Position numbers and translations under genes: made by a program. 64,000 nucleotides of DNA from Selaginella moellendorffii (taxonomy: Eukaryota > Plantae > Lycopodiophyta). Positions within the stretch are counted from its first letter, which is position 1. Each line of letters begins with the position of its first letter. Positions 6,311 through 62,730 of the stretch are shown here, piece after piece. The stretch is taken from the NCBI RefSeq assembly GCF_000143415.4, contig NW_003314263.1, positions 4,095,628 to 4,159,627 of the forward strand, read 5' to 3'. A model generated the notes under the pieces. The model was not told the origin of the DNA, ran no database searches, and worked only from the letters and a program-made list of their open reading frames with translations.

Positions 6311-9300
6311 ATGACCAACAGTGCTTCACTCGGGCGCAATGGCTGTCCAACTCGAACGAGCATGGAGAACATCAAGCAGCCAAAGTATGGATATGCCCGT
6401 GCAAGAGGAGAGCTCCAGCGTGGTGGCTCACGGGCAAGATCACACGAAGCTCAAGCGTCTCCGTTGCCCAAGAGCCCACAGCACCACCATCACTCCAAGG
6501 TTTCAAAGGCGAAACGCATGCGTTTTCTCACGAAGTCGGACAAAGGCTGGAGTTGGCTGTCGGTGCAAATGCGTGACGTTGCCTCGGAGGTTAAGATGGG
6601 AATGGCCAGGAAGGGAGAGCTTCCACAGGAATTGGTGCAAGCACTCTGGGGCCGTCAAGGCCCCGGGTCGTGTTGCAAGGGACAGGAAGCACTGCTTGAT
6701 CACAAGCTCGAGAAGAAGCTAAAGCCCAAGGGAAAAGGAAAGCCAGGACGTAAGCCACAGAAGCCTGACACCAGGGTCTATCCTGACGAGGATGATAAAG
6801 TTCTTGAGGATGATGCTCCAAAGGTACGTTTCTTTTCTCTTGTTCTTTTATGTTATCTATACAGCGGGCTGATCGACAGCATGTGATGCAGACACGCAAA
6901 AGTAGGCAGAAGAAAATTCCTGAAACCTTGATGGACGTGCTGCTGGCAAAATGGGTTTATTTTGACCATTCGCATGCGGATGTGTCGCAGGTTCGCTCGT
7001 TGTTTTTTTTTCTGGCTTGCTTTACATATGGTTCAGTGCTTGCTTTATGTCACAGGTTGATAAGCACATCCACGCAAAGTATTGTGAGAATGCTTTTGGT
7101 CACTTCCTTTTCCCCGATGGCCGACAAGTTCATGGTTCTTACAGCGTTCCCTTGAGCTACTTGGTTCAAGAGCTACGGAAGCTGCTGACACACCTCAGAA
7201 GCAAGATTGTCAACACGCATTACAAGGTACGTAAACAACTCTTTGTTACTCGTGGTTCAATGCTTTTCATTTTTACAGGATCTGCCTATTTTCAGTCCGC
7301 CAGAGCAACAAATCCTACCCGAGTTTGAGCCTCCAGAAATGAAGCCTTTGCCACAGCTGTATCCCATAGACGGCCTTCTTTCCATTCCAACCGAAGAATC
7401 CGAGGGGATTGGTCCTACCCTTGAGCTCCCGGTCTTTGAAGCCCCTGTTCCCAAAGAACTTCCTGCGCTTGATTTGCCACCCCCTCTCCGCGTCTCACCT
7501 TTGAAAATTCCGCCTCAGCCAATCTTTCTGGAAGATGAAAACAGCATCGACAGAACCTTATACAAGGAAGATCCTCTGCCAACTTACTATGCCCCTGAGA
7601 AACTTCCTTTGCCTCAATGGGTGGAACCAAAACTTCTCGACTTCCCGAGTGCTCCAATTCCTATGAAGGTTCCAGTTTTACCGATGCCAATTATGGAGGC
7701 CCTTCCGCCATTTGTTGCTCCGATTCCTGAACCTCGGCCTTGTGAAAAAGCCTACTATGCTGTCGACGAGAGCTTTGGTCCCTGTTGTTGCGAGGGGAAG
7801 TGCATGCCAAATGTCGACATGTATGCTAGGAAAGGCAAGCCTTGTCAAGCCAAGCCGAGAGCTCTCCTTCCTTATCCAGAGTCACCTTATCCTCTGCCTC
7901 TAGTGTTGAAACCCGAACCCGTTTTCCTACCACCTGTAGGCGAGCCACTTCCAGAATTCCATCCTCCCGCATTGAAAGTAAGGCCAGCTTACGTTCCACC
8001 ACCTCCGCTCGTGTTGCCTCCATGGAAGCCACCTCCAGCTCCGGATCCTATAGGATATCTTGCTGGACAGAGGCCTATATTCCTTATAGACGCCAGTGGA
8101 ACCATGGCTAAAGGAGGTATGAAAATGGCTCATGACATCCTGGCTGCGGTTTTTTCTCCCGGGGGCCAGGTGAGTATGTCACACATTGGCTTTTGATCAA
8201 GTTAGTTACTGAGTTTGCTGATGTTTTGCAGGTTGCCATAGCAGCAACTCATTTCGACATTATCATGTACTCGTTTGATGCCTGGAGTTACGCTTCCATG
8301 GAGAACTACAGGCTGTACAAACAAAACACCAGAAACACTGCGTCACCCCGGTTCTGGAGTCCTCAAGAGGTGAGAAATGGTATTTTTCTGTCATTCTGCT
8401 AAACGCAAGGGAACATTCAGGCAGGCAATGATAGAGAAAACGCCTGCCAGCCTTGAGGAGGCGCTGAACTGGGCATTGCGTTGGGGAGCAGGAGGCCCAA
8501 CGAATCTGCTGAAGGCTCTCGATGTTTCTTTTAGTCGGAGCTTTTGTGATTGCATATATCTTCTCACTGATGGAAAGCCAGACAAGCCTGTTCTGGTATG
8601 GTTTCTCTTTTGTTGCTTTAGAAGTTTATTTGACATTAACTATTGTCATTGTCTCAGGTGATGCAACAAATCAAGAAGCTTCTAAAGATGCAAGGCGCTG
8701 TCACCCCCCTGTACACAGTTGGATTGGGAACGACGAAGTATGGAGAACGTTTCCTGCAGAGGATCTCCGAGCTAACTGGAGGCGTTGTAAGACATGTCGA
8801 CCGGAATTGGGCAACAAAACCGCCGCCAGTGTCAGGGGTGGCTCTGGAAGACATGCTGTGGGCTAAATCCATCATAGAAGGCGAGCAACGGAGGAACATC
8901 GTTCGTGGTATAGTTGAGACGATACACGACCTTGAGGAGAAAGTGAGGCTACGTTACGACAAGGAAAGAAACGCACCTCGGCTAGCAGCTTATCAGAAGA
9001 ATCAGAAGAAAATGGAGGAAGACTACGAGGCGCTTATAAAGTCAATTGACGAAGAGAACGAAGCATTGCTAGCGGCTGCAAAGAGGAAGTACGAGGACGG
9101 CTGCAAAGATATCATTGCAAGGAACATGGTGCTGCACGACTTTGCCAGGGAGAAGTGGTTGGAGGAGTGCCGGCGTGTCGAGCAGCTGAATCAACGCGCT
9201 GTAGAAGAAATCGAGAAATGGAAGCGCCAGGTGAAGCACATTGACGAAGAGAACGCAAGGCTGGCAGCCGAGGCCAAAAAGCAGTACGAGAAGGACGTGA

Positions 9301-10619
9301 AATGGGTGGAGGAAATGAACGCGCTCAGTCTGAAGCGAGCAATGGAAGAGTACGAGGCCGATTGTCTCAAGAAGAAAACAGCATTCGAGTTTAAAGTCAA
9401 GGAGACCGAGAGGCAACAAAAGGAGATGGAAGAGACAGTCGCGACCAGGAACAGGATCAACCAGGAGAACCACGCAAAAATGGTGGCCGAGATCACTCAG
9501 ACGAACAAAGAAACAACAGAGAAAGCTCACGCGGATCACGCAGCGAGGGTGGCGTACATCGAGTCGGAAAACGCGCGCATCAAAAAGGAGTCGGAGGACG
9601 CATTCCAGAGCACCTACGACAAAGTAAAGCTGGAAAACGCTCGACGAGTAGCGGCTCTCAAACAGAAGATCCAAGACCTCAAAGAGAACAAGGAGAAGAC
9701 GCTGTCGACTTACAAAGCAGAGCTCGCAGCAGCCATGGCGGAGCACGAGGCACAGTCCAAGAAGTTTGCCAAGCTCAACCAGGAGACCGAGGAGCGCGCA
9801 AGGGCGAACTGGAAGCTGGCGTGCGAGGCAGTGGCTGCCGAGAACATGGCGATTGCAAAGGCCGCAGTGGAGGAGTACGAGCGGCAATCCAAGTTCGTTC
9901 ACGAGCAGAACATGAGGCGAGCCAGTCAGATAGCAGCAATGCTCAAGAAAAAGGCGGAGGTGGAAGCTCAAAACGAGGAGGTGACGAGGGTGAAGAAGAT
10001 CCAGTGGAAGGCGGCCTGCGCACAGGCGGAGGTCGACTACGAGATGGATGTAACACGGGCGAAAGAAGAACACGAGATGCTCTCGCTGGAGGTGAATGCC
10101 AAGAACTCGGAGGCTTTCCAGGAGGCTCTGCTGGAACACAAGGCAAAGGTGGCGGCGGTGAAGAGCTACAACGAGACTATCCGCCCGTTTGTGGAGGCGT
10201 CCATCCTCGTCAAGGCGGAGATAGCACGCGTGGAGAAGTTCATTCGCTACATCGGCAATGCGTGCCTGGATCCAAACCGCAAGTCCACGGACACGGCGTC
10301 GGATCTAAACGTGCTGGGGAAGTCCGAGCAGGGAATGGAGACCAAGATCTTGGTGGAGGCGCTGCAGGAGGCTTACAGTACCAAGCGCGAGGGTGGTGAC
10401 TACGTCCAGAGGCCCAGTTTCTACTCGGGCAAGGACTTCTCCGGGATGATACCGATCCATCCGCCTCGAGCACCACAGCACCACTGCCCGGACTTGGATG
10501 GCCACGTCCGGTTGAAGGAGCTGGAACTGGAGAGGTTGAGGCTCGAACTAGAGGAGATCAAAGCCGAAGAGGAAGCCAAGATATCCAAAGAGAAGGACAA
10601 GCCGCTCTTCAGATTCTAA
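6311..10619 (+). CDS. VWA3-like vWA protein with long Pro-rich insertion and C-terminal coiled coil; about 7 exons, start uncertain (6311 or 6362)
   Basis: IFLIDASGTM MIDAS strand, GGPTNLLKAL, CIYLLTDGKPD, RFLQRISELTGG; Pro-rich exon 7279-8169; E/K/A-rich heptad region in last exon 8658-10619. Confidence 0.8.
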
Positions 10620-15619: not shown

Positions 15620-16130
15620 TCTTCCAGCATTTTTTCTCGAAAATGTTCTTGAGCGAGCTCCAAAACCGTGATGCCGCTGTTCTATGAGAAAAACCACGAT
15701 ATGCTGATATGGAGCTTCTTCATATCCATGCCTTTCTGGGACGAGATCTTTACAAACACAGTGCTCAAAGGTGATGATCACTGCATATGCCCAGATCGGG
15801 GATTTGCAAACGTTGCATTCAAAAATCACTAAGGTGGCCGCGTTCTTCTCTCGAAGGATTTTTTGTGGCCCGAGCTTGAGAGACGTTTGATTTGATGCCA
15901 CAAAGGAATGTTGGAATTCGATGATTTGTGCAGTTGCCCAAGCTGGGTGCTTGGAGGAGGCAACAGTGGTGCTTGAGAAGAAACCACAACACAAACAAGC
16001 TTCGTATTTTCTTCTAATGCTTCTTTACAGCGAGAAGCAAACGATCGATTATCTTATGTCAATGTTCCAGCGGCTTGTGGAGAGGAATGTTGTGGTAATG
16101 GACATTGCTCATATCAGCAAATGCCCGTGG
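15620..16130 (+). pseudogene. Degenerate 5' part of a paralog of the PPR gene at 19708-21639
   Basis: Colinear DNA matches with deletions: 15720~20040, 15775~20170, 15880~20311 (gagacgtttgatttgatgccacaaaggaatgt), 15920-16130~20358-20570; frameshifts. Confidence 0.85.
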
Positions 16131-19510: not shown

Positions 19511-19740
19511 CTAGAGCAGTATCATCACCAAAAGCAAAACTCCAGATTCAAATAGTATATGAATGAACTTAAAAGACACTCGGGCTAAGGCCGACGAGAG
19601 CTAGTTTTTGAAGACATCTGTCAACTTCCAAGAACGAAAGCTTGCAGCGGTTTCTCGAAAATGTTCTCGCGATCATAACAGATTCCAGCCTTTAAGTTCC
19701 ATCCAGTTTGAGTCGATTCAAACCAGGTGTTCTTTCTTGC

Positions 19741-21639
19741 ATGATCTTGAAGAAGGTAGGGCCGCAATTTAACAGGAGTAACAAGTTTTGGAGCGACCAG
19801 TTGATCGGGATCCATGGAAGAAGAGGCGATGTTTCAAGAGCTCGCCGGGTTTTTGAGAGCATGGAAGGTCCGGACGTTTTGTCCTGGAACGCCATGCTCA
19901 CGGTCTACACGCACAATGGATTCATGGAGCAAGCAAAGCATTTCTTCGATTCCATGGAGCAGCGGAGTGTGGTGTCGTGGAACATTGTCCTGTCCGCACT
20001 TGGAGAGCTCGATGATTGTTGCTACGAGAGTTTCTTCGAATCCATGCCTTGTTGGGACGTGATCTCCACAAACACGGTGCTCAAAGTTCTGACTGAGCAC
20101 GGAAAAATCGTCCAAGCTCGTGATATTTTCGACAATACAAGCGAGAGGAACCTTGTGTCGTGGTCAATAATGGTCACTGCATATGCCCAGGTCGGAGATT
20201 TGCAAGCCTCCGAGAGCTTCTTTTTAAAGATGGCAGAGGGAAACACGATAAGCTGGTCGGCTATGGTGGCCGCGTATTCTTACGAAGGATTGTTTATGGC
20301 CAGAGCTCGAGAGACGTTTGATTTGATGCCACAAAGGAATGTGGTGTCTTGGAACTCGATGGTCTGTGGATTTGCCCAAGCTGGATGCTTGGAGGAAGCA
20401 GAAGTGATGCTTGAGAAGCAACCGCAACACAACCAAGCGTCGTATGTTCCTCTTTTTCTTCTCTACGGTGAGAAGAAAAGGATCGATGAACTCATGTCAA
20501 TGTTCCAGCGGCTTCCGGAGAGGAATGTTGTGGTTTGGACGTCGCTCATATCAGCATATGCCCGTGGAGGGCAGTATAAAAAGGCGAACGATACCTTTGA
20601 AAGAATTCCATGCAGGAACACTGTGTGCTACAACATCATGCTTCAGATGTACCGCGAGAATCTTAATACTGAGAAAGTTGGCGAGCTTTTTGGCGACATG
20701 CCTCAGAGAAACTTGGCTTCGTGGACGACTATACTTCAAGCAAACGCGGATTCTGGTAATCTTTGCACGGCCACAACGACATTCTGGAAAATGCCGGGGT
20801 GGAGAGTGATAAGCTGGACTTCAATGGTGTGTGTGCTCGTGTCCAAGAGGAAGCTGGAAGAAGCGAAAGTTTACTTTGAGAGGTGCCCCATGCGTGATCT
20901 TATGTGTTGGAACGCTGCAATTTCAGCTTTAGCCACTGCTGGATATCTAGATCACGCAAAAGCTTTGCTCGAGAAAATCCCGGCGAGCAATAATCTGTCA
21001 TGGGCAAGCATGGTAATTGCTTGTGGAGAGAATGGAAACGTGACTCAAGCCAGAGATTTAATCCCTTGGAACGCTTCTCAAGAAACATCAGTCTTGAATG
21101 CTCTGATCGTAACGCATGCCCATAATGGCCATCTTTTCGAAGCAGAAGAAATCTTCGACCAAATGCATGAGAAAAACACGGTTTCCTGGAATTCTATGAT
21201 CGTTGCTTACGCTCAAAAAGGTTGCATCCAAACTGCGTTGGAGCTATCGTTCAGGATGTGCCTTGAAGGTGTCAGCTGCGAGGAGACGACAGTCACAGGG
21301 ATTTTGTTTGCGTTTAGCCACGAAGGAATGCTCCAGGAGGCGCTGTCGTGGTTTAGATCCATGGCTTTTGATCACGACTTTAGACCGTCAGTGGAAAACT
21401 TCCGATGCATGGTAGACATTCTGGCGAGAATGGGAAGGATTCACGAGGCAGAAGAGTTGATTCACAGCATGCCATTCACTCCCGATGACGTTTCATGGGG
21501 AAGTTTGCTGAGTGCCTGTAGACTACAGAACGATGTGGAATGTGGGACACGAGTAGCCAGTAACATCTTCTACTTACAACAGGATCAAAAGCTCCTTAGA
21601 GCAAGTCCTTACATGCTTCTTGCTAGCATAACAAACTAG
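19741..21639 (+). CDS. Intronless PLS-class PPR protein with E-type C-terminus, no DYW domain
   Basis: Repeated (N/D)VVSWN/WT..M motifs; ENFRCMVDILARMGRIHEAEELIHSMPFTPDDVSWGSLLSACR; ORF open from 19708, first ATG 19741. Confidence 0.93.
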   Translation: MILKKVGPQFNRSNKFWSDQLIGIHGRRGDVSRARRVFESMEGPDVLSWNAMLTVYTHNGFMEQAKHFFDSMEQRSVVSWNIVLSALGELDDCCYESFFESMPCWDVISTNTVLKVLTEHGKIVQARDIFDNTSERNLVSWSIMVTAYAQVGDLQASESFFLKMAEGNTISWSAMVAAYSYEGLFMARARETFDLMPQRNVVSWNSMVCGFAQAGCLEEAEVMLEKQPQHNQASYVPLFLLYGEKKRIDELMSMFQRLPERNVVVWTSLISAYARGGQYKKANDTFERIPCRNTVCYNIMLQMYRENLNTEKVGELFGDMPQRNLASWTTILQANADSGNLCTATTTFWKMPGWRVISWTSMVCVLVSKRKLEEAKVYFERCPMRDLMCWNAAISALATAGYLDHAKALLEKIPASNNLSWASMVIACGENGNVTQARDLIPWNASQETSVLNALIVTHAHNGHLFEAEEIFDQMHEKNTVSWNSMIVAYAQKGCIQTALELSFRMCLEGVSCEETTVTGILFAFSHEGMLQEALSWFRSMAFDHDFRPSVENFRCMVDILARMGRIHEAEELIHSMPFTPDDVSWGSLLSACRLQNDVECGTRVASNIFYLQQDQKLLRASPYMLLASITN

Positions 21640-22142
21640 ACAATGTGTATAAATATGTAATCGAAAGGAGGACAGTCGGTTTCATCCGCAATTGCTACCT
21701 CCCCTCTCTGAATTGAACAAGGTCTATTTGTTTCTCTGAAGAAGACTATCAATGATTCAAGTTTTTGCTGGTCCTCCTTCGATTGATAGACAATAGGCTT
21801 CTTGTTCTGGAACATAGCAAAGGTAATTGTATGGGCTGATTGTCCACACCAGATTTCTGAAGTAGAGCTTTGAAAACCCTCCAGTTTAATCAGCATTGAT
21901 GGGAGCTCCCATCATCTTGACTGAGGAGAAAAGTCCAGAAAACGATAGCATTGCAAACTCCATAAGAAGGCCCAGTGCTTTCGGCGCTTAGGTATGGGCC
22001 GTTGACTATTTCTTGTCGTTGACCTGACCATTAGATGGGAACCGGCTGGACCTGGATCGTGTTGGGCCAGAAACGCTTGCTTTGGAGTTCGGAACACACT
22101 TATGCTTGTCAAGTTCGAGCTTTGTCAACTTGAAATCTAGAT

Positions 22143-23852
22143 CTATCTCTTACTCTTGAATTTCTTGGATTTGTCCAGCATATCCACCATTGCCGACGTT
22201 CGGTACGACTCATCATCTGAGGGTGTCTCTTGTACCAGGCTTTCTGAAAGAACGCCACCAGTGCTCATTCTTTTAGCACTAGCACCAACACAAGGAGCTC
22301 CATTGCTCCGTGGTTTAGCACCACCACCTCTGCCCCCTCTGCCACCTCTGCCAACTTCGAAAAAGGCGGGGCGCTTCCGTGCTGATTTAAGTAACAAAAT
22401 TCACAAGAGTTAGAACACAAAAGACATCCAAAATGTCTTACCTTTCGCCTGGTACGAAGCTCGCTGGTTGCAGTGAGAATTCCCGTTGGCAAGCAGCACA
22501 GCATGTCCCTCGGAGTGGTAATAGTCCCCCTTCATGCACTGGATCAGCTCGTCGAGTTCTCTCACCAATCTCCTGGACAAGCCATCGCCAGCTCCAAACG
22601 CTCGGGAGCTCTCAATCTTCTGTTTCACGTCCACCAGCACTTGCTTTGCCGACGCCAAGCTGCCAGACCCCAGCTTACGAGCGGCAGCCATCGCCTTCGA
22701 GGCACTCACACGGTTCTTCTGCCTGTCCACCTCGATCTTTGTCGCCTCCTCTTCTTCGCCAGCTTTGAGCTCCTGGATCACCAAGCTCGAAGTTGCAAGC
22801 TGCTGGGTCTTGTTCGACTGCCCAGGGTCTTGAAAGCTTCCCTCAACTTTGAGAAGTTCCATCGACAAAGAGCTCGAGTCGGAGCTAGGCAGCAAGAGCC
22901 CCACCAGGATATCTCTCTCCTCTTCCGCATACAGGGATCCAAGCTTCACTGTCGCAGCTCGATCGCCATCCATGGCCGTCGTCCCGGCGGTGGCTTCCAC
23001 ACTCCTGATCTTCGCTCCGCCACTCGCCTCGATGCAGACTTCCACTTCCTGTGCCACCACGCTAAGCAGCCCGCCAATGCACTGAGCAAACGCGTGCTGG
23101 ACGGTGGACTCCTCTTGCACGTAGCAAAAGCTGCCGCCTGTGGCCTCGGCGATGCTGAGCATGGCCTCGGGATCATGGTCACTTCCAAATCCAAAAGTGT
23201 GCACTGGAACTCGCTCGATCCCATTCTCGAGGTAGGAATCAACAGGAAGAACTTTGCATCGCTTGAACGTGATCGCATTGTCCATCCCGTCCGAGAGAAG
23301 CATGATGCTCGACACCGGGTTCCTGTTCCTGCGCCGCGAGAGAAGATCGAATCCAGCCTTTAGCCCCGGACGGATCTCGGTCCCTCCCAGGGTCCGCAGC
23401 TTCTCCACTGCACTGAGTGCCGCCTCTCGACCGTCGTGGGTCATCCTCTTGAGACCGAGATGGACTTTGGGCTCGTCCGAGAAGGAGACGATCGCGAGGC
23501 GGTCCTGCTGTCGCAAATTCCGGATCACAAACTCCATGGCGGTCTTGACGAGCTCCAGCTTCTGGCCGCGCATGCTGCCGCTCACGTCCAGCACTGTCAC
23601 CAGATCGACCGGGGCGCGAGCATCGGCGGCGGCCAAGCTATCGTCTTTGGGAGCTTTGAGATGAACGAGCGCTGTAAAGCATCGCTCTTCTTCTTCTTCT
23701 TCTCCCCTGGCCTTGATCTTGTCGACCTCGCCGATGATCTTGAGCTCCGGCTGCTCGCCAATCACTAGCCAGCCTAGCTCCTCGCTAAGATGGACGATCT
23801 CGTCTTCCTGGAGCGCGCTGCTTACCTCGGAATTCTCAAACCCTGCCGCCAT
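22143..23852 (-). CDS. vWA-Vwaint protein lacking the N-terminal RING; exons 23852-22442 and 22381-22143
   Basis: RAPVDLVTVLDVSGSM, MLLSDG, VHTFGFGSDHD, LYAEEERD, SHCNQRAS; second exon ends YRTSAMVDMLDKS. Confidence 0.9.
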
Positions 23853-23859
23853 GTTCTCT

Positions 23860-24155
23860 ACCTATGACCTAATCGAAGAGAATCATATACTTGCATACTT
23901 TTCTTGGTATATTCGTTAATTTGTAGGTCATCTTTATTCTTGATGATCTATAGAACTATTTAAGTTCCCAGCAACCATCTTGTGGAATTCTGGAAGGTCA
24001 TGCCGGTTAAGTCAAGTCACTGACCCATCTCTTGTCATTGATAAAGAAAAAAATGAGCATAACGACGTGGAAAATCACATGCGAGCAACTTTAAGAAGAA
24101 ATGTATTTGCCGTATCCAAAGGGAGATCCCCACGCCTACTCTCTGCTTTATAAGA
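23860..24155. promoter_or_regulatory. Divergent promoter with seven TGAC cores including a W-box, and TATA for PR-1
   Basis: TGAC/GTCA at 23865, 23927, 23997, 24011 (AGTCAA), 24016, 24021, 24034; ttataag near 24147. Confidence 0.55.
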
Positions 24156-24229
24156 GGATGGTCTCCCACAGTAAGTTTTCGTGCTCCTATACTTTTTAGT
24201 TGTGCAATCCGCGTTCTAGTTTGATCGCT

Positions 24230-24733
24230 ATGGGGGGAGTTCTTCGTGCAACTCTAATGGTTGTTGTGATCTATGGCACTGGATTTCTCCACGCAGGTCT
24301 TGCAAGCACGGAGAGTGATCTTGTCAACGCACACAACTCCGCGAGATCTGCTGTTAGTGTTCGTCCGCTGGTTTGGAGCACGCAAGTTGCCTCGTATGCG
24401 CAAAACTGGGCCTCGACTCTCCAGGCGAGCTGTCAAATGGTCCACTCTAGCGGGCCGTATGGCGAGAACTTGTATATGTGGAGGGGGAGCGATGGCTCGG
24501 TGGCGCCTCCAGCCACGGACGCAGTCAAAGAATGGGTGAAGGAAAAGGCTGATTACAATTACGCATCAAACACTTGTGCTCCGGGCAAGGAATGCAGGCA
24601 CTACACTCAGGTTGTGTGGAGGAACTCGACGCGAGTGGGATGCGCTCGAGTGAAATGCAATGGTGCGAATGCGTACATTGTGAGTTGCAACTACGATCCA
24701 CCAGGCAACGTTGGAGGCCAGAAACCTTACTAA
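24230..24733 (+). CDS. PR1: Pathogenesis-related protein 1 (CAP domain), intronless
   Basis: Signal peptide, AHNSAR, GPYGENL, CRHYTQVVW, CNYDPPGN..PY. Confidence 0.95.
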   Translation: MGGVLRATLMVVVIYGTGFLHAGLASTESDLVNAHNSARSAVSVRPLVWSTQVASYAQNWASTLQASCQMVHSSGPYGENLYMWRGSDGSVAPPATDAVKEWVKEKADYNYASNTCAPGKECRHYTQVVWRNSTRVGCARVKCNGANAYIVSCNYDPPGNVGGQKPY

Positions 24734-25365
24734 AGATCGATATGAAAATAGTTATGTATGAAATAAAGATGAAAGATCAATAAATTTGCTCTTCTGCCTT
24801 CATGCTACCAACGAAGGGATTGAAGACGTCAAGCAACACCATTCTGCTAATCAGGTAGAAAGCAATTCTTTTCTTGTTTCTTATTTCTTAGTGACTCAGA
24901 TAAACTGGAGGACGTGGGAAGTTCTTGTATGGGACGTGTTTGTACTGAATGGAGCGATATCATTGTGGGAGATGTCATAAACGATTGGTTATCTTCTCAA
25001 AAATTAGAAATTAAATAATTTGAGTGCTTTTTATTTATTAATCACATTGATAACTTGTAATAAAATTAATCTTGTGTTATAAATTATAAACATCAGATTA
25101 ACTTAGAATATACTAGTAAGTGGTTAAGAAAGTTTATAAATTATAGATACAAAATGAATAACAATCTTTAGATAGTAAAATAAACCAGAATATTTTAGTA
25201 TATTTTAGATACAGGTTCCAAAAATTATATACTGTTAATAATTTTGTACATGTGAGATTTGTTAATTTAAGCTGGACTTCCTTGTCCAAGACCAAGAACA
25301 ACCAGGAAAGTGTATTGCTTTTACTGAAAGAAAGCCTTCACTCCTCACTCCTTCGCTCTTTGTTT

Positions 25366-26025
25366 ATGCTCCTACAGCCGCATTGTGGAGCAAGCTTGAT
25401 CAAACTTCCGTTGGGTCCCAGTAACGAACACCTAGGGCAAGAAAAGTTGGGAAAGAATGGAGATTCTTTCTCTCGATCGGTGTCAAACACCGAGGTGGCC
25501 GAGTTCGTGGCGGCCAAGCAGCCAGGCAGCGTGAGCGAGGCCCAAGCCGTGGTGGCCAAGCTCACGGCGGCGCCGCTGGCCAAGCGGTGCTGGGTGTGCT
25601 ACATGGGCAACGAGGACTACGGCAACTGGCTCCGGGGCACGGTCAACGGCCGCCCGGTATCCTTCATGCTGAGCCAGAACTCGGACAGCTTCGTGTCGGT
25701 CAATGCGGTCAATAGGCTGGGGCCGACCACGACGCTATGCCGCCCGTTTTGCGTCAAGTTCCTGGGCTGGAACCCCTCTCCGCCCCACAATCGCAAAGTT
25801 CGCAAACTCAAGTTTCAGCTCGAGGGCGGCTACAAGGGCTGCATGGATTTTTCAGTCATGGATCTGATTCACCACGATTTCGTCCTCGGGCACCAGCTCT
25901 TGAAGGTGTGCTCCGAGGCGATTTACAAGGACGATGATGGTATCATCAAGGTCGACTTTGGATTAGGCGGTGGGCAGAAGTTTACCTCGCCGTTCCACCA
26001 GGGGCGTCCCCAGTTTGAGGAGTAA
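25366..26025 (+). CDS. Retropepsin-fold pseudo-protease copy 1 (possibly pseudogene; ATG homologous to copy 2 at 25457 is out of frame)
   Basis: LRGTVNGRPVSFMLSQNSDSFVS..LG..DFSVMDLIHHDFVLG; paralog of 26645-27220. Confidence 0.6.
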   Translation: MLLQPHCGASLIKLPLGPSNEHLGQEKLGKNGDSFSRSVSNTEVAEFVAAKQPGSVSEAQAVVAKLTAAPLAKRCWVCYMGNEDYGNWLRGTVNGRPVSFMLSQNSDSFVSVNAVNRLGPTTTLCRPFCVKFLGWNPSPPHNRKVRKLKFQLEGGYKGCMDFSVMDLIHHDFVLGHQLLKVCSEAIYKDDDGIIKVDFGLGGGQKFTSPFHQGRPQFEE

Positions 26026-26644
26026 ACGGCGTGAGTTTCTGCTCGCTGCTCTTTTCAGTTCTGTTAACTTGCAGGTGATGAAAGGGCTTGGACATCGTCC
26101 AGAAGTTATGATTCTCATGGTTTTAGCGTTTCCCAAGCTCGGCTATCGTTTTAGAAGACGAAGCTATATAAGCTTTGCGAACAGCCTCATCAATAAAAGC
26201 TACCTATGAAACCATCAATGGATCAATATCCTGATGGTGCTTTGGAACTGTGACCCTTAGCTGGCCAGCTCATCCACTCAACTCTCACGTTCGCGACGGC
26301 ATCAAGCTGCAAGCTCCAAGACGTATCCCAATGCCAGTGCATGACATCGGGTACTCTTTCTCGAGAGGACGTGGTAGAGGGCCTCTCCTAGAAGTCTCAT
26401 ACCTACTCGCTGTAACCACACTTGTCATCGTTGTTCAGGTGGTGAATAAGATCAAGCTACAAGGCTCAGAAACTATGACAAAGATCATCAAGGAAAACAA
26501 CCATGTCTGAATAATGCATGGGTTTGGCCGAAAAGAACAAGGTGCGAATATTCCCTGCTAACGTTCCTGAGTCGCTCCCTACCCTAATGCAGGGTTTTAA
26601 AAGCACCGGTATATTCTTCTCCTGAAACGGTCCTAGGGCAAGAA

Positions 26645-27220
26645 ATGGAGCTTCTTCCTCTCGAGGTATGCAGCTTTCTCCAGTCGGTGCCCAACGCTGA
26701 GGTGGCCGAGTTCGTGGCGGGCAAGCAGCCAGGCAGCTTGAACGAGGCTCAAGACTTGGTAGCCGAGCTCACGGCGGCGCCGCTGGCCAAGACGTGCCTG
26801 GTGTCCTTCGTGGGCGACGACGACTATGGCCGCTGGCTCCGGGGCACTGTCAACGGCCGCCCGGCGTCCTTCATGCTCAGCCAGAACTCGGACAGCTTCG
26901 TGTCGGTCAACGCCGTCAACCGCCTCGGGCTGACGACTTCGCTGTGCCATCCGTTTAGCGTCAACCTGCTTGTGGGGAGCACCGCGCAGCCCAGCAATCG
27001 CAAAGTGGCGGACCTCGAGTTTGAGCTCGAGGGCGGGTTCAAGGGATGCCTGGATTTCGCGGTCATGAATCTGGCTCGCCACGATTTCGTCCTCGGCCAC
27101 GAGCTCATAAACTTGTGCTCCGAGTATGTTCTCAGCTTTCGGGATGGCATGAAGATCGAGCTAGAATGCGGAGGGCAAAGTTTCACCTCCCGGTTTCAGC
27201 AGGGCCGTCCCCAGTTCTAG
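26645..27220 (+). CDS. Retropepsin-fold (Ty3/gypsy gag-protease-like) protein lacking the catalytic D(S/T)G, copy 2, 191 aa
   Basis: Gag-like helix QPGSLNEAQDLVAEL, then LRGTVNGRPASFMLSQNSDSFVSVNAVNRLGL..FAVMNLARHDFVLG. Confidence 0.75.
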   Translation: MELLPLEVCSFLQSVPNAEVAEFVAGKQPGSLNEAQDLVAELTAAPLAKTCLVSFVGDDDYGRWLRGTVNGRPASFMLSQNSDSFVSVNAVNRLGLTTSLCHPFSVNLLVGSTAQPSNRKVADLEFELEGGFKGCLDFAVMNLARHDFVLGHELINLCSEYVLSFRDGMKIELECGGQSFTSRFQQGRPQF

Positions 27221-30200
27221 GCAATCCGTAAGTTTACAATGAAGTTTCCGTCGTTTTCTGAGTTCTCATGTAGACTCTCCAGGTTGTCGTGGGTCATGAA
27301 TCGTCGAGAAGATGTTCTTGGATGTTGTGTTTTTTCCATTGTTTCATCGCAGAGCTTGTTTCCATCGTCTTTCCATGTTTTCCATTGTTTCGTATAGTTC
27401 TTTGAGCTTCTCTTTACGTGGCTCTTTGATTAGTCACGCTTTCTGGTCCTGGAGAATCGCCCCCAGCTGCTTCCAGGCCTGTCTCCTCTGTGCCATTAAG
27501 AACGCACTGGGCTGTGATTAAAAATCCAATGAAATCAAAAGCATTGGTTTGCAGATCAACATATGCTTTTTTTTCTTTCTCCCCGAGCGGACAAAGAATA
27601 TAAGAATTGTAATCTATTTGGCCTGGATGGCTCTAAATAGGCCTGAATCAGCATTGCAACTTTGGCATTAGATTCTCTTTCACCTCTTGAACCCATCCCG
27701 TGGCCATTGCTCATGCCCAACCAGAAAATCACATTAAACTTTCCAAAAGACAGGATCCAATTTGCTAAATATTGATTGATAATATTCCCCCGCCACCAAC
27801 ATCAATGCGCAGTGTAGGTTGGATAACCAGCACTCGCCATATCAAAAACTCCAAAGGTTCATATCAGATCACGCTGTCACCTCCTTATTCAACCTTATCA
27901 CCATGTGGCTTGTGGGTGCCCAAAAGAAAAATAATCAAATCTCATTCTATATTGTTGTTTAGGGCGTGTGTGAAATTTCGAGCACACACTGTCATGGCCA
28001 CAGTAATGGTATGTTTCTCGCTGCCAACACAAACACTAAACAAGCTTAATTGACTAAAATAATACTTACTACTAAAATAATGCCCGGGAGATCTACCGTC
28101 TGGATACCGACGGCCGAGACAAGCCCACGTGACAGGAGCGCCAGATCGGGACCACACATTATTCAGTCCACATCGCCCGTTGAAACCGGCTACCGTCGCT
28201 TTCCCACCTTTTTCTTTCCTAAAGTGGCCATATGGCCCAAGCCGTACACCGCGGGAGGCATATGCCTTGGACTATTCCAAGATATTTGGGTGTCTAATAT
28301 TCCTATAGCTACATGCAGTGCACAAGGCTATGGTATTTTATCACACACCCAATTAGACAATTTAGGCTAGGAAAGGAAAAGAATTTGGAGGAAGTGGTCC
28401 TGGCGCTCAATGAAGAGCCTTGTCTCGGATTGCGGGGACAAGGATACACAGGGTTGGCTGACACCCCCACCAAAGCACACCAGCACACAAAACAGATGAT
28501 AGGGGAGTAACAGGCAGCCAGTGGTAAAGGAAAAGTAGAAGATTTTTACACGCCTTTTACCCCCCCCAGCCCCACAGGGATTGCGAGCCGGGCTTGGAGG
28601 CATCCACAAAGATCTGGCTTTTATGCAACAAAGATATGTCATTGGGATGGAGAGCGCAGGCCCACCACGATTCTAAGGCATGCATCCCTCGGTCCAATCC
28701 ATTTCCGTATCATCTTTTTTGCCCTTTGATCACACACGTCTCGCTCGTCTATCTCGGTGTCACGCTTTGCTTGTGACCCCAAAACACACACTCTGGGTCA
28801 CACTGACTGCTGACTGATTGACGAATTGACCCGACCCGCAAAGGTTTATGACGTAAAAGGTGGTGGAGGGGACGAATAAAACCCCCAAAGGTAAAAGGGG
28901 TGCAAAGGGTAAAAGCAAAAGAATGGGTCGAGGAAAGCACCGCTCAACTGATTTCCAGTTCCGGGGAATTGGATCCGGGACTGACCCATACCCGTACTCG
29001 CGCAGATATTCCACTCCAAACAAACACACACACCTAAACCCGCCACCTTTGCTCGTACGGCCAGCCCACGAAATATTTTTGCCGGCCCAACAAACAATCT
29101 GTTTCTGACTGCCACGTTGAAGCAGGGATCTTGATCTTGGTTCGGACTCTTTTGACTGGCTCCCACCTAAACTACATGCTTTGAATGTGTTGCCCTAATA
29201 CTCACGCACGCTCGGATGTGGAAAGGTGGCGGGCACCTACCTCAGACTTACCAACAATAGCAAGGTGGTGCACAACACCACGCACGAAAAATAGAGCCTA
29301 GGCCAACTTTTCTTCTTTCGCAATGGGTCCGAATCGAAAGTGACCTTTGCGGAGCATTGCATTTGCCCTAAATCTTGGCACCACCACCTTTTTCAGCATG
29401 ACCTTTGAATGCGTGGCGGATATTCCTATCTATCCACTGGCCACTTCAGACAATTTGGTTACGCGAGCTGGATTTGGCCGGACGCTCATTGGCACAGAAG
29501 TGGGGTGGCCAAATCGTCTGGCCTGGCAGGCAAGAAACTGGGCGCCAGGTGGCGGTCACCCAAGGTGGTATATTCGCCGAGCAGAGCGACTGCTGTGGTT
29601 CTCGCTTAGTGGTACGTCTCTATCCAAAGGACTATGATTTTTCTGACCAATGGCCGATGTGGAATTTTCCCATTGGCGATGGTACAGGGCCTGCGATGTA
29701 ACGCCTTCCCCCAGCTATATCTATCTACATGATGATGATCTATCTCTTTTGACGTTTTCAAAGTGGGCTAAGGCTAGTTTTGCCAAGTCTGGGGGACCGC
29801 CCGCTAGATTTGGTGGCATATATGAAAGGTGAATTTGAGGGAATTCGTTTGTCGTGTGGGATGATAGCAGCCGACCAAACATGGGCCGTGTAGTGCCCAA
29901 CAGCGGCATTGCAAATCTAGCGTCGCGTCTCTTTTTGGGTATAGGGTTTAAGCGCGATAAACCCTAAATCTCTCCCCGGGCTTTTTGTCTGTGATTGAGA
30001 TTCTCTTCCGTCCATGGATCAATCAATCAGTCAATCAATCAGCTAGCTCATCGCGCGGGCATCTTGGACTGTGTCAATTATACAATCTATACACCAAGTG
30101 TACTGGGCATTTGCCCATTGTTTTATGCCACTTATCACGCCCCCAGCGGCATGCGTATGGATCTCTTTAGCGTTGGATCCACGCCACCTTGACCTAATCC

Positions 30201-30741: not shown

Positions 30742-31133
30742 GGGATGTGGCGGGGGATTAGCGTCGTCCGATGGCGGCCATCCGACGGCAGTGCCACGGG
30801 GGATTAGGGTTCTACTGTTAAGGATGAGGTTATTTTAGCGAGAGTAATATTGAGGCCAATGTGAAGAAGTGGAGGAGCGAGCGCTAGCGGCGAGAGCGAC
30901 GATCGCATTCTCTTTGTGATCGATTCGAGCTAGGTAGAGCTGCGGTGCAAGGTACCACTGGGATTTCGATTCCATTGCCAGGGTTCGAGCCTATGTAAGG
31001 GGAGATCGATCCATTCGCCGCGCGAGCGCGTAGCGCTCCCTTCCTTGTTCTTGGCAATGTGTGACGAGATGGAGGGCGGCGAGGCCCGGGGCAGCGATAT
31101 TTCGGCGTGATTCCACCGCGATTTCGCCCGAGA

Positions 31134-33167
31134 ATGGCCGCATTGGTGGTGAGATCCTCGGACCACGACAAGGTTCTCTCGGGGCTGGGGCATCACGGCA
31201 GCGCTCACTTCACGGCCGATAAGGTCGTGTCTAGGATCTCTAGGGGAGGCGGCGGCGATGAGCCATCGTCCTCGCTCCTCCAGGGAGCGCGCGGCCGGTC
31301 GCGCAAGAGCAAGAATGGGCCAAAGAAGCAGCCGCAGCGGGGATTGGGCGTGGCGCAGCTAGAGAAGCTGCGATTGCAAGAGGAGAGCAAGCAGGAATCG
31401 GCGTGCCTGGCGTCGCTGGGCCTGGTGCCGCTGCCATCCGGCTATGGATTCCTGGACCAGGATGTCTATCCTCTCCTCTCGTCGACTCCGCGGCACCACC
31501 ACCACCACCCCCACCACATCAAGGGGATCTTGGGCTTTGGGAGTGGCTACAGGGGCAGCAGCAGTGGCTCGCCGGATCATCGAAATGGGGGGTTCTCGCC
31601 GGGAGGCTGTGATCCGTCCGTGGAGCCATCGCCGCTAGAAATTCTGATGCAGCAGCACGAGGTGGCGCGAATGGTGGCCACGTCCAAATCCTCGCCTCTG
31701 GTGCCGGCCTTGGTGGCTCCTCCTCCTCGAGCTCCTCCTGATAAGAATGCCGGGGGTCTCATGGCTGCGGCGATGATGCGCGCGGCTGCTTCTTCCAGCT
31801 CCTCGCGCAACGAGGATGCGATGGTGGTCAAGCAGCAGCAGCAGCAGCAGCAGCAGCGAAAAGCTGGTGGCGAGCATCACCCCTTGGGTGTGAATTCCGG
31901 CCAGCTTTTCGATGCGTCGCTGCCACCGGGGTCACTCCCGATGCCGCGCGATTGCAGGGAATTGTCTATGGTACGTTTCGTGTTTTCTAAGCCTCGCTCT
32001 ACTCGTGAAGCTTTTAACAAGCATTTGTTTCTCTCTTTTGTTTCCTCGCGCTGGCTGGCTGTCTCAAGGTTGGCATTCCCAAGGAGCTCTCTTCTTTCCA
32101 AACAAACTTTCCAGGACACCAAGTGTGGCCTAGCATGCATAATGTAAGTTCGCTCGTTCCTTGTGCTGGGCGTTTGCTCGCGTAAAGTATACAGGGAGAT
32201 TGACTCTCTTTCTTCCTGGCAGGCTTCTGTGGAGAAGCAGCGTCCATGCGTCGTGATTTCCCTGGATCACGGGGAAATCCACTCCAACTCTTCACAGAGT
32301 GAAACCGCCGACAACATTCTCAAGCCGGGCGCGCACTATACGCCTCGGAGCATCAGGTATTGCGTGCGTGGGTGGCCAGTCTCTTGTCTCTCTTTTCTCG
32401 TTGCTTCAATGCTGTGTCGTCGACCGAATCATGGAACTGAGAGTCGCTTTTGTTTGCGTGCAGTAATGCGCTTGGCAAATCATCGCTGCCGTTTCTTAAG
32501 GCCGATGCAATCAAGCAGCAGCCGAGTTGCATTGGTGCCGCGCCTGGCTTTGACAATCTCGTCAAGAGCGAGCACCACCCGACCGACAGCAGCACGTCCA
32601 GCGTCTCCAGCATGCCATTCCTGCGCAAGCGAGTCGCGGCTGCTTGCTATCTCGACTCCACATCATGCTCGGCGGCGAAAAAGGCTCTGGTGTCATCAGG
32701 GGCTGACTTCCTCGCCCTGAGCCTTTCAATCTCGCACAGCGACGTCGAGTCCAGCGGCAGGAGCCTGATTTGCTCTGCCAACACCAACGCTTCTCCCGCC
32801 GCTGCCCAGCAGCAGCAGCAAAGATCGTCACTGTCGCTGCAGGTACGATATTATAGATGACATACCTCCTCTCTCCCTCTTTTCTTTTCTGCTCTCTTTG
32901 GGTTTCCTTCGTTGTCACTGGTGACTGATGACAGACATGACATTATTTTGGATCCAGGAAACACTGACTGATGTGGAGGATGGCAGCAGCAGCCAGAAAT
33001 CTCCGAGCTCTTATGGCAACTCCTTCACGGATGTGTCAACGATCGAGGAGGTGGAGCACAGCATCACCGTGTCCCACCGGCAGGATAATCGCCATCATCA
33101 TCAGCATCATCGTCGCCGTCGCAGCAGCGCCCAAGATGTGGATCTCAACTTGAAGCTGGCCATCTAA
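31134..33167 (+). CDS. SPOROCYTELESS/TIE-like (SPEAR) transcriptional co-repressor, about 5 exons
   Basis: KKQPQRGLGVAQLEKLRLQEE SPL motif, ELSS motif in exon near 32084-32143, terminal EAR motif DLNLKL. Confidence 0.9.
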
Positions 33168-56266: not shown

Positions 56267-56943
56267 TTTGCTTCAGTGAACCTTTTCACGATAGGTTAGA
56301 TAGTAGACCTAGGGCTTGCAAAAAGAATATCCTCAATGTTTGCTTAAACTTCAAAATTTGATTGCAAAAAAGAGAATTTAAACTTTGTCATTTATGTCAT
56401 CCATATTACAACCATAATGTGTTTTTGAACAAATGTATTAAAGTAGTGCATGAAGTCTTTATGTTGTTTTCACCATCATATAAAGTTTGATACCAAAATC
56501 ATTTAGCAAATATTTCTTATAGATATAAAATTATATCTTATTCTAATTTTTAATTTACATTTTTTCAGCACACACCTAACATTAATAGGTTTTAGCATGA
56601 TCAATAAGAAAAAATTATGCATATGCAACCTTTGTAAGATTATTTATATCTAATGTTATAAAATAATTTTTTATATTATAGACTCAATCTTTAAAACTTA
56701 ATATTTTTATATGCTTTTAAATCTAGGTGGTTTATAGGGTATAAACTTTGAAATTCATACAATTGGAGGCAATTGTAAAATTTTATTATCCTTAGAACTT
56801 GAAAAAGAATTTAGTTACTTAAGTTTAATTACTTTTACTTTTTTATTACTTTTTAACTCCGATCTTTTTTGGTCACCACAAAAATAATCGGATGATACAA
56901 AGCAGGCATTTGTAGAGTTTGAGCTTGCCAGAGTCCACATGTT

Positions 56944-58670: not shown

Positions 58671-58673
58671 ACT

Positions 58674-58685
58674 TAGTGTCGGAGC
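58674..58685 (+). other. Degenerate tRNA-iMet primer binding site
   Basis: tagtgtcggagc versus canonical tggtatcagagc (three A/G transitions). Confidence 0.65.
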
Positions 58686-62718: not shown

Positions 62719-62730
62719 GGGTGGTGGAGT
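62719..62730 (+). other. Polypurine-tract-like site
   Basis: gggtggtggagt directly before the 3' LTR. Confidence 0.7.

What the first reader, a model, noticed from the sequence alone, without database searches (positions are those of the whole stretch)
25366..27290. Tandem pair of domesticated retrotransposon-protease-fold genes that lack the catalytic aspartate
Seen: two paralogous GC-rich ORFs, diverged from each other yet both reading FMLSQNSDSFVS, with no LTR, RT or integrase sequence nearby; each has a candidate GT-AG intron just after the stop (26031-26074, 27228-27282). Known: the pattern (L.G.V.G..V..LIDSGAT.NFIS...V.RLGL ... F.V..L...D.VLG) is the Ty3/gypsy retropepsin fold, which needs D(S/T)G; QPGSLNEAQDLV resembles the last Gag capsid helix. 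Inference: an exapted Gag-tip plus pseudo-protease family that may act as a peptide-binding scaffold or as a dominant-negative partner that poisons the obligate-dimer proteases of active LTR elements, i.e. a possible host anti-retrotransposon factor.
Basis: partly seen in the sequence, partly recalled or inferred. Interest (0 to 1): 0.82.

Follow-up and report, generated by a model that had tools for sequence, protein, structure and literature searches.

The report
Catalytically dead retrotransposon-protease genes in Selaginella
Two neighbouring genes in the spikemoss Selaginella moellendorffii descend from the capsid-protease part of a Ty3/gypsy retrotransposon, have lost the protease's catalytic aspartate yet still evolve under constraint, so they look like a small host-adopted "dead protease" family whose job is still unknown.

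Summary
Two intact paralogous ORFs, c1 (25366-26025) and c2 (26645-27220), are 66% identical, GC-rich, and sit among ordinary plant genes in Selaginella moellendorffii. No LTR, RT or integrase signal was found anywhere in the 64 kb.

Pfam and PDB sequence searches on c1 and c2 alone find nothing. An exhaustive profile search links them to retropepsins through intermediates:
- A Selaginella gene (P0003/P0009) with a full Ty3 capsid domain and the same altered protease domain.
- An expressed multi-domain pseudo-protease (P0004).
- Ordinary DSG retrotransposon proteases.

hhalign gives 98.7% probability against DSG proteases. An AlphaFold model built with those relatives matches DDI1, XMRV and HIV protease folds.

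The catalytic Asp is Leu in c1 and c2 and Ala in P0003, and the motif Gly is Gln or Asn. dN/dS between c1 and c2 is 0.24-0.46, which points to purifying selection after catalysis was lost.

The "domesticated Gag-tip plus pseudo-protease" reading is therefore supported. The proposed anti-retrotransposon, dominant-negative function has no direct evidence. Expression, orthologues outside this species and the true gene models remain unknown. c1 is broken in two of three copies on another scaffold.

Verdict: a new variant of a known kind (domesticated retroelement Gag-protease genes), of moderate interest.

The parts
25366..26025 (+). c1: 219-aa ORF, Gag-tip remnant plus pseudo-retropepsin domain. 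Basic: the shared core has pI 8.75 and net charge +4.
   Evidence: Start is the first in-frame ATG. GenBank model EFJ36185 (P0002) starts here.
25457..25459 (+). ATG in c1 homologous to the c2 start codon. A c1-specific 19-nt deletion at about 25476 puts it out of frame, so c1 depends on the upstream ATG at 25366.
   Evidence: DNA alignment; indel list
25483..25560 (+). c1 remnant of the last Gag (Ty3 capsid) helices
   Evidence: Colinear with the c2 segment that hhalign places on P0003 residues about 113-140
25582..25941 (+). c1 pseudo-retropepsin core
   Evidence: 47% identity to the P0003 protease-like domain. tblastn hit by DSG protease P0005 at 25630-25902.
25666..25698 (+). c1 degenerate active-site loop (MLSQNSDSFVS); Leu replaces the catalytic Asp
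26031..26074 (+). Candidate 44-nt GT-AG intron 5 nt after the c1 stop. A second possible donor (GTAAAC at 26022) overlaps the stop and is homologous to the c2 donor.
   Evidence: no transcript data
26026..26644 (+). c1-c2 spacer. It holds the middle exon of the fused GenBank model (about 26262-26438). It is the least conserved segment between copies.
   Evidence: 87-88% identity and 10-11 indel events against 97-99% elsewhere. In-frame stop 20 codons upstream of the c2 ATG.
26645..27220 (+). c2: 191-aa ORF with the same architecture as c1. Acidic: core pI 5.0, net charge -6. Intact in all four copies seen.
26690..26767 (+). c2 remnant of the last Gag (Ty3 capsid) helices (residues 16-41)
   Evidence: hhalign against P0003/P0009. 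The P0003 Ty3_capsid Pfam match spans residues 10-143.
26789..27148 (+). c2 pseudo-retropepsin core (residues 49-168)
   Evidence: 50% identity to P0003 over residues 49-155. hhalign to DSG proteases over residues 65-168, probability 98.7%. AF2 core pLDDT 86-94. Foldseek top hits DDI1, XMRV and HIV proteases.
26873..26905 (+). c2 degenerate active-site loop: Leu78 for Asp, Ser79 kept, Gln80 for Gly
27228..27282 (+). Candidate 55-nt GT-AG intron 7 nt after the c2 stop
   Evidence: no transcript data

Best explanation
c1 and c2 are tandem paralogues of a small host gene family in Selaginella moellendorffii. The family descends from the gag-protease portion of a Ty3/gypsy retrotransposon. Its most complete member (P0009, with allele P0003) still has the whole capsid domain. 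c1 and c2 keep only the last capsid helices plus the protease domain. The protease domain kept its fold but lost the catalytic Asp (Leu or Ala) and the motif Gly (Gln or Asn) before the three genes diverged. It has stayed under purifying selection since. The proteins are therefore most likely kept for a non-catalytic role. I propose a retropepsin-type dimer, either a homodimer or a c1-c2 pair, whose groove binds an extended peptide instead of cutting it. Shown here: descent, loss of the catalytic residues, non-mobile host context, and constraint. Inferred: dimerisation and peptide binding. Unknown: the ligand, expression and phenotype.
For: Homology. An exhaustive profile search of 1.84 billion proteins gives only 8 hits: P0003 at E 9e-28, P0004 at 1e-10, and four DSG proteases at 2e-4 to 9e-4. 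Pfam calls RVP_2 in all of these and Ty3_capsid in P0003, at 34 bits against a cut-off of 29. hhalign of the family against DSG proteases gives 98.7% probability, E 3.6e-16. The AF2 model has mean pLDDT 76.7. Foldseek finds DDI1 RVP at E 5e-6, then XMRV and HIV proteases, and caulimovirid and retroviral proteases. Catalytic loss is shared by c1, c2, P0003 and P0009. Host context. The window holds ADH, subtilase, PPR, VWA, PR-1/CAP, PFK and a proteasome subunit, with no retroelement domain or LTR. P0003 and P0009 lie between oxidosqualene-cyclase and PDI genes on two syntenic scaffolds. Constraint. c1-c2 dN/dS is 0.46 by NG86 (bootstrap 0.32-0.68, 0 of 300 replicates at or above 1) and 0.24 by ML, with dS 0.47-0.82. 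P0003 against c1 or c2 gives 0.39-0.46. The invariant Ser79, which in retropepsins forms the inter-subunit 'fireman's grip' (my own knowledge), the flap Gly111 and the D147-x-x-L-G151 helix motif are all retained. c1 is basic and c2 acidic; 16 of 22 charge-changing differences go the same way.
Against: There is no expression evidence. Exact-product look-ups found no transcript-derived contigs. No paper names these genes. No orthologue outside S. moellendorffii was found, so constraint is shown only between paralogues. c1 lost its ancestral start-codon frame. It carries frameshifting deletions in two of three units on scaffold GL377609. The P0003 allele is interrupted by a repeat insertion. The confident structure depends on canonical proteases in the alignment; with the four family sequences alone AF2 fails, at pLDDT 34. 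Dimerisation and binding were not modelled.
Confidence: 0.6

Rival explanations
1. Host anti-retrotransposon factor. The dead protease subunit heterodimerises with the protease of active Ty3/gypsy elements and poisons it. The Gag-bearing member P0009 may also co-assemble with element Gag and poison it.
For: Ancestry from gag-protease. The fold and the fireman's-grip Ser are retained while the Asp is lost. The array differs in copy number between two scaffolds (one unit against three), with gene birth and death next to PR-1 genes. Gag-derived restriction factors are an established class, including Fv1 and Ty1 p22 (reviewed in PMC13709905) and RTL8 against PEG10 (PMC11684626). From my own knowledge, engineered inactive HIV protease subunits act trans-dominantly.
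Against: There is no direct evidence. The nearest DSG proteases are only 28-38% identical and come from ferns and unidentified samples, not from a Selaginella element. dN/dS is below 1 rather than showing the positive selection usual in arms-race genes, although no site-level test was possible.
Confidence: 0.13
2. Functionless relics: a captured gag-protease fragment that was duplicated along with its neighbours and is slowly decaying. On this view the low dN/dS reflects history, GC-biased gene conversion or chance.
For: The family is seen in a single species. c1 is broken in two L001 units and its start-codon frame has shifted. One P0003 allele is interrupted. There is no Pfam hit on c1 or c2 and no expression data. 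Flanking non-coding DNA is as conserved as the coding DNA between the window and L001.
Against: The ORFs stay open across dS 0.5-0.8 (c1-c2) and about 1 (against P0003), with dN/dS significantly below 1. c2 is intact in all four copies, with dN = 0 among the three L001 copies. GC3 of 0.82 is codon-position specific.
Confidence: 0.2
3. c1 and c2 are exons of one gene, as in GenBank model EFJ36185 (456 aa). That gene would encode two pseudo-retropepsin domains forming an intramolecular pseudo-dimer, as pepsins do.
For: The stored model P0002 joins them through a donor at 26022 that removes the c1 stop. That donor is homologous to the c2 GTAAGT donor. P0004 and P0010 show that transcripts with four or more tandem pseudo-retropepsin domains exist in another organism.
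Against: The spacer carrying the proposed middle exon is the least conserved segment, with many indels. RefSeq models c2 alone. c2 has its own ATG preceded by an in-frame stop. c1 is followed by AATAAA at 26192. c1 is broken in two units in which c2 is intact.
Confidence: 0.1
4. Still an active peptidase that uses other residues, for example the invariant Asp83 or a Ser/His pair.
For: S79, S82, D83, H146 and H152 are invariant in the family.
Against: From my own knowledge, no retropepsin is known to work without the Asp dyad. Asp83 lies five residues past the catalytic position in both alignments.
Confidence: 0.03

Closest known systems
Ty3/gypsy retrotransposon proteases (Pfam RVP_2 PF08284, gag-asp_proteas PF13975)
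   Same: Same fold and colinear motifs: G-x-V-N-G strand, F-V-S after the active-site loop, flap Gly, and the D-x-x-L-G helix.
   Different: No catalytic Asp or Gly. No RT, RNase H, integrase or LTR. Too divergent for a direct Pfam hit.
Selaginella SELMODRAFT_447725 / 438917 (P0009 / P0003), annotated only as hypothetical or retrotransposon gag domain protein
   Same: Same pseudo-protease domain: 47-50% identity, with Asp and Gly lost and the S-x-x-S-D motif shared. Host-gene context.
   Different: Carries the whole Ty3 capsid domain and a linker of about 45 aa that c1 and c2 lack.
Mammalian domesticated Gag-protease genes PEG10, RTL1 and the protease ASPRV1/SASPase
   Same: Host genes derived from the Ty3/gypsy gag-pol region that have lost LTRs and RT (PMC3406341).
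   Different: Those keep the DSG active site, and PEG10 and ASPRV1 are active proteases (PMC3406341, PMC7212762, PMC11402058). The origin is independent and in animals.
Arabidopsis AT3G29750 family of cellular proteases derived from a Ty3/gypsy protease
   Same: Plant host genes reported to nest within Ty3/gypsy proteases (PMC13547354).
   Different: Described there as proteases. No sequence link appeared in my searches. It is an angiosperm family, not a lycophyte one. The state of its catalytic motif was not checked here.
DDI1/DDI2 retroviral-protease-like domain
   Same: Best structural match, TM 0.66-0.71 normalised to the target.
   Different: DDI1 is pan-eukaryotic, keeps the Asp, and has ubiquitin-like domains; from my own knowledge it has no Gag part. 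Identity is 8-16% only.
Gag-derived restriction factors (Fv1, Ty1 p22, RTL8 against PEG10)
   Same: Truncated retroelement structural proteins that interfere with their relatives (PMC13709905, PMC11684626).
   Different: They act through the capsid, not through a dead protease. No interference has been shown here.
Plant co-opted gag genes Crtg8-11
   Same: LTR-retrotransposon gag co-option in plants (PMC8321522).
   Different: All four events fall within angiosperms, two of them within eudicots (PMC8321522); the words 'protease' and 'Selaginella' do not occur in that paper, so neither a protease part nor this lineage is covered there.

Membership tests
Retropepsin-like domain (Pfam RVP_2 / gag-asp_proteas / Asp_protease_2) | Profile match above the curated threshold | tested here: not met
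   c1 and c2 have no hit at E <= 10. Their closest relative P0003 just passes RVP_2, 21.0 against 20.3 bits. P0004 scores 80 bits.
Retropepsin-like domain (Pfam RVP_2 / gag-asp_proteas / Asp_protease_2) | Homology by profile-profile and transitive search | tested here: met
   hmmsearch reaches DSG proteases at E 2e-4 to 9e-4 in 1.84 billion proteins. hhalign gives 98.7% probability, E 3.6e-16.
Retropepsin-like domain (Pfam RVP_2 / gag-asp_proteas / Asp_protease_2) | Retropepsin fold | tested here: met
   The AF2 model with relatives in the alignment has core pLDDT 86-94. Foldseek finds DDI1, XMRV and HIV proteases at E down to 5e-6. Caveat: the family-only alignment gives pLDDT 34, so the model is not independent of the sequence link.
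Active aspartic peptidase, family A2 or A11 type | Catalytic D-(S/T)-G | tested here: not met
   The motif reads L-S-Q in c1 and c2 and A-S-N in P0003 and P0009, in both the MAFFT and the hhalign registers.
Active aspartic peptidase, family A2 or A11 type | Obligate homodimer | not testable with these tools
   No multimer prediction was available and I built no joined chains.
Ty3/gypsy Gag (Pfam Ty3_capsid PF19259, Retrotrans_gag PF03732) | Capsid domain match | tested here: not met
   c1 and c2 have none. Only a remnant of about 25 aa is colinear with the end of the P0003 capsid match. P0003 and P0009 themselves meet the criterion.
LTR retrotransposon (mobile element) | LTRs, RT, RNase H and integrase in the same locus | tested here: not met
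Domesticated (exapted) transposable-element gene | TE-derived coding sequence at a fixed host locus without mobility features | tested here: met
Domesticated (exapted) transposable-element gene | Purifying selection | tested here: met
   Between paralogues only: dN/dS 0.24-0.46, with bootstrap values never reaching 1.
Domesticated (exapted) transposable-element gene | Syntenic orthologues in other species | tested here: inconclusive
   None appeared in the protein databases. Genomes of other lycophytes could not be searched at the DNA level.
Domesticated (exapted) transposable-element gene | Expression | not testable with these tools
   No RNA-seq access. Exact-product look-ups were empty.
DDI1 family | Ubiquitin-like domain plus an RVP domain with the Asp | tested here: not met
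   No UBL or UBA Pfam hit and no Asp.

The most novel reading that the evidence does not exclude
A plant lineage has turned a retrotransposon's own protease, and in P0009 its capsid too, into a catalytically dead decoy subunit. The decoy would restrict Ty3/gypsy elements by forming inactive heterodimers or defective particles. That would be the first natural host-encoded 'protease poison'. It sits in a copy-number-variable array beside PR-1 defence genes.
Probability: 0.1. Interest if true: 0.85.

Novelty: new variant of a known kind. Interest (0 to 1): 0.5.

Why it matters
Domesticated retroelement Gag and protease genes are well documented in mammals and have recently been reported in Arabidopsis. 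The documented cases keep the active site. Here a lycophyte family has lost catalysis yet remains constrained, and it includes a graded series: full capsid plus pseudo-protease, then capsid tip plus pseudo-protease. That gives a concrete system for asking what a retropepsin fold is good for without catalysis. It also gives a testable candidate for protease-level or capsid-level interference with LTR elements in plants. In practical terms it corrects the annotation: the genes are currently "hypothetical" or "uncharacterized", with three conflicting gene models.

Tried and rejected
- **Direct family scans:** Pfam on c1 and c2 at E <= 10 gave no retroelement family.
- **Solved structures by sequence:** phmmer against PDB sequences at E <= 10 gave nothing.
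- **Word-index searches:** c2 found only its near-identical copy P0001, and P0003 found only itself.
- **Family-only structure model:** AlphaFold with only the four family sequences failed at pLDDT 34, so I did not search with that model.
- **Gag tip by pairwise search:** BLASTP of the c2 N-terminus against the P0003 Gag part found no significant pairwise match. Only hhalign aligns it.
- **Transcript evidence:** exact-product look-ups for c1 and c2 found no record.
- **Literature by gene identifier:** no hits.
- **Conservation between the window and scaffold GL377609:** I rejected this as evidence of selection, because the non-coding flanks are equally conserved.
- **Reading past the stop codons:** for c1 the two candidate donors I checked, each joined to the 26074 acceptor, leave the protein end unchanged. 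For c2 the donor lies after the stop.
- **Fused c1-c2 model:** I judged it less likely (see rival explanations).
- **What I did not build:** The fused and spliced models were examined only as stored database proteins P0002 and P0003. The broken c1 copies are only described. No contig looked human.


Full report
**What is there**

The window is nuclear DNA of the lycophyte Selaginella moellendorffii. The word-index search with c2 returned one protein, RefSeq LOC112349934 (P0001), at 98% identity. The window itself matches GenBank model EFJ36185 (P0002) apart from splice-junction residues.

The two ORFs are real. c1 is 25366-26025 (219 aa). c2 is 26645-27220 (191 aa). They are 66% identical over 184 aa and share the FMLSQNSDSFVS string.

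Their GC is 0.60-0.62 and GC3 is 0.82. Local GC is 0.46-0.49, and the neighbouring genes have GC3 of 0.54-0.70.

The neighbours are ordinary plant genes:
- a PPR gene (19708-21639)
- a VWA gene (22410-23852, minus strand)
- a PR-1/CAP gene (24200-24733)
- further away, ADH, subtilase, phosphofructokinase and a proteasome alpha subunit

No long ORF in the 64 kb has a retroelement domain. No LTR-like direct repeat flanks the pair. Gag and protease probes hit only c1 and c2.

**Is it a retropepsin?**

Direct tests fail. Pfam gives nothing at E <= 10, and PDB sequences give nothing.

Because the word search and the family scans left the protein open, I ran the exhaustive profile search with a c1/c2 alignment. 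Among 1.84 billion representatives only eight proteins pass E 0.001:
- The two models of this locus.
- P0003 (E 9e-28).
- P0004 (E 1e-10).
- Four proteins at E 2e-4 to 9e-4. Pfam assigns these to RVP_2, gag-asp_proteas and Asp_protease_2 above threshold, and they carry a normal DSG motif.

hhalign of the family (c2, c1, P0003, P0009) against those four DSG proteases gives 98.7% probability and E 3.6e-16 over 101 columns.

An AlphaFold2 model of c2, built on an 11-row alignment that includes these relatives, has mean pLDDT 76.7 and 86-94 in the core. Foldseek then returns the DDI1 retroviral-protease-like domain (E 5e-6, TM 0.66-0.71 relative to the target). XMRV and HIV-1 proteases and a Rickettsia retropepsin follow. 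In the viral library it returns caulimovirid and retroviral proteases.

As a control, the same prediction with only the four family sequences collapses to pLDDT 34. The structural match therefore corroborates the sequence link but is not independent of it.

**The catalytic site**

In the hhalign register the canonical V-D-S-G aligns with M-L-S-Q in c1 and c2. In P0003 and P0009 it aligns with V-A-S-N. MAFFT shifts the register by one residue, but it also finds no Asp.

The aspartate and the glycine of D-(S/T)-G are therefore gone in every family member. The motif Ser (S79), the F-V-S that follows, the flap Gly111 and the D147-x-x-L-G151 helix motif are all kept. Canonical aspartic-protease chemistry is excluded.

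**Where it came from**

P0003 (SELMODRAFT_438917) and its allele P0009 (SELMODRAFT_447725) are Selaginella proteins of 326 and 329 aa. Their N-terminal half matches Pfam Ty3_capsid, at 34.2 bits against a cut-off of 29.1, and also Retrotrans_gag. Their C-terminal half is the same pseudo-protease, 47-50% identical to c1 and c2.

P0009 is one uninterrupted ORF. Both alleles lie between oxidosqualene-cyclase-like and thioredoxin/PDI genes on two syntenic scaffolds, with no RT or integrase nearby.

hhalign of c1/c2 against P0003/P0009 extends colinearly upstream of the protease. P0003 has about 45 extra linker residues. BLASTP alone does not see this, so the Gag-tip claim is moderately supported.

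The simplest history has three steps:
1. One gag-protease fragment became a host gene and lost catalysis.
2. A truncated copie arose.
3. That copy duplicated in tandem to give c1 and c2.

**Selection**

| Comparison | dN | dS | dN/dS |
|---|---|---|---|
| c1 vs c2, NG86 | 0.22 | 0.47 | 0.46 (bootstrap 95% 0.32-0.68; 0 of 300 replicates at or above 1) |
| c1 vs c2, ML | 0.20 | 0.82 | 0.24 |
| P0003 vs c1 or c2, protease core | not listed | 0.9-1.2 | 0.39-0.46 |
| P0003 vs P0009 alleles | 7 nonsynonymous changes | 6 synonymous changes | about 0.33 |

The Gag tip, the core and the C-terminal tail of c1 and c2 give similar ratios.

c1 and c2 arose by local duplication, not by transposition. This constraint therefore reflects selection at the host locus after the aspartate had already gone.

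**Reasons for caution**

1. No relative outside S. moellendorffii was found, apart from P0004 and P0010 from an unidentified sample.
2. I could obtain no expression evidence.
3. On scaffold GL377609 (L001) the unit [PPR fragment - VWA - CAP - c1 - c2] is present three times. c2 is intact in all three. c1 is intact in one unit and carries frameshifting deletions in the other two, at window-equivalent 25598, 25628 and 25818.
4. The window's c1 has a 19-nt deletion that puts the ATG shared with c2 (25457) out of frame. Its long ORF therefore needs the upstream ATG at 25366.
5. Identity between the window and L001 is about 98-99% in the flanks as well as in the ORFs, so that comparison says nothing about selection. 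Only the c1-c2 spacer stands out, as poorly conserved.

**Gene models**

Three models exist:
- Two separate genes, which is my preference.
- RefSeq's c2 with a 103-codon upstream extension. That extension is closed by a stop in this window.
- GenBank's fusion of c1 and c2, through a donor at 26022 that removes the c1 stop and a middle exon in the variable spacer.

Their donors are in homologous positions. They would be 3'-UTR introns that leave the protein unchanged. Only transcript data can decide.

I examined the spliced and fused models only as stored database proteins.

**How it probably works**

My best reading, at confidence 0.6, is a pseudo-enzyme. The retropepsin fold is kept for a non-catalytic role: subunit pairing and peptide binding in the former substrate groove.

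Two observations are consistent with pairing: the inter-subunit Ser and the flap are retained. The opposite net charges of c1 (+4, pI 8.75) and c2 (-6, pI 5.0) hint at a c1-c2 pair. All of this is inference.

It has good precedents for Gag-derived factors (PMC13709905, PMC11684626). It has no direct support here, and the family is only distantly similar to any active protease found. I give it about 0.13.

The relic hypothesis gets 0.2. The single fused gene gets 0.1. Residual catalysis gets 0.03.

**Comparison with what is known**

Domesticated Ty3/gypsy gag-pol genes that keep an active DSG protease are known in mammals: PEG10, RTL1 and ASPRV1 (PMC3406341, PMC7212762, PMC11402058).

A family of Arabidopsis cellular proteases derived from a Ty3/gypsy protease was reported in 2026 (PMC13547354).

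Plant gag co-options described so far are all within angiosperms, and that study mentions neither protease nor Selaginella (PMC8321522).

I found no description of a host-retained, catalytically dead retropepsin family, and none of these Selaginella genes. I therefore rate this as a new variant of a known kind, with moderate interest (0.5).

Noticed in passing
L001 (GenBank GL377609.1:236156-257040) against window 20632-27735: The roughly 7.3-kb unit [PPR 3' fragment - VWA - PR-1/CAP - c1 - c2] is single in the window but present three times on this other scaffold. One unit has an extra VWA gene. This is copy-number variation between haplotypes or paralogous segments.
   Followed up: partly
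L001:8940-9506 and L001:18417-18983: The c1 copies in units 2 and 3 keep the 19 nt that the window's c1 lacks. They carry frameshifting deletions of 1, 13 and 23 nt and are probably pseudogenes. Annotation fuses one of them to c2 as a 421-aa model.
   Followed up: partly
L003 and L004 (Logan SRR33208242 and SRR33208241); proteins P0004 and P0010: These are contigs from an unidentified organism that encode at least four tandem retropepsin-like domains, 50-59% identical to one another. In every domain Ser stands in place of the catalytic Asp, and acidic linkers join the domains. The two contigs are 100% identical except for blocks present in only one of them, which looks like alternative splicing of an expressed gene.
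   Followed up: partly
L002:9692-10402 (P0003 locus): The P0003 allele has an insertion of about 350 nt just after codon 19. It contains telomere-like TTTAGGG repeats and copies of a repeat about 60 nt long. A 67-nt inverted repeat pair (99% complementary) brackets the first exon. The annotation splices the insertion out, and the other haplotype (P0009, L005:8001-8990) is one uninterrupted ORF.
   Followed up: partly
window 25465-26022 against 26672-27217: c1 is basic (net +4, pI 8.75) and c2 acidic (net -6, pI 5.0). Of 22 charge-changing differences, 16 make c1 more positive. This is a weak hint that the two could pair.
   Followed up: partly
window 24200-24733 (+) and 22410-23852 (-): Immediately upstream of c1 lie a typical PR-1 (CAP domain) gene and a VWA-domain gene. 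Both are co-duplicated with c1 and c2 on the other scaffold.
   Followed up: no
window 56000-64000: There is strong purine-strand bias, with GC skew 0.14-0.30 and AT skew up to 0.23 in 2-kb bins. The long ORFs there have no Pfam match.
   Followed up: no
window 15911-16096 and 20349-20534: A 186-nt direct repeat at 84% identity. The second copy lies inside the PPR gene, which suggests a second PPR paralogue or fragment upstream.
   Followed up: no
window 8643-10619 (+), 7207-8196 (+), 31107-32147 (+), 53445-54899 (-): Long ORFs of 329-658 aa with no Pfam family at E <= 0.001. The ORF at 31107 is low-complexity, rich in His, Gln and Ser.
   Followed up: no
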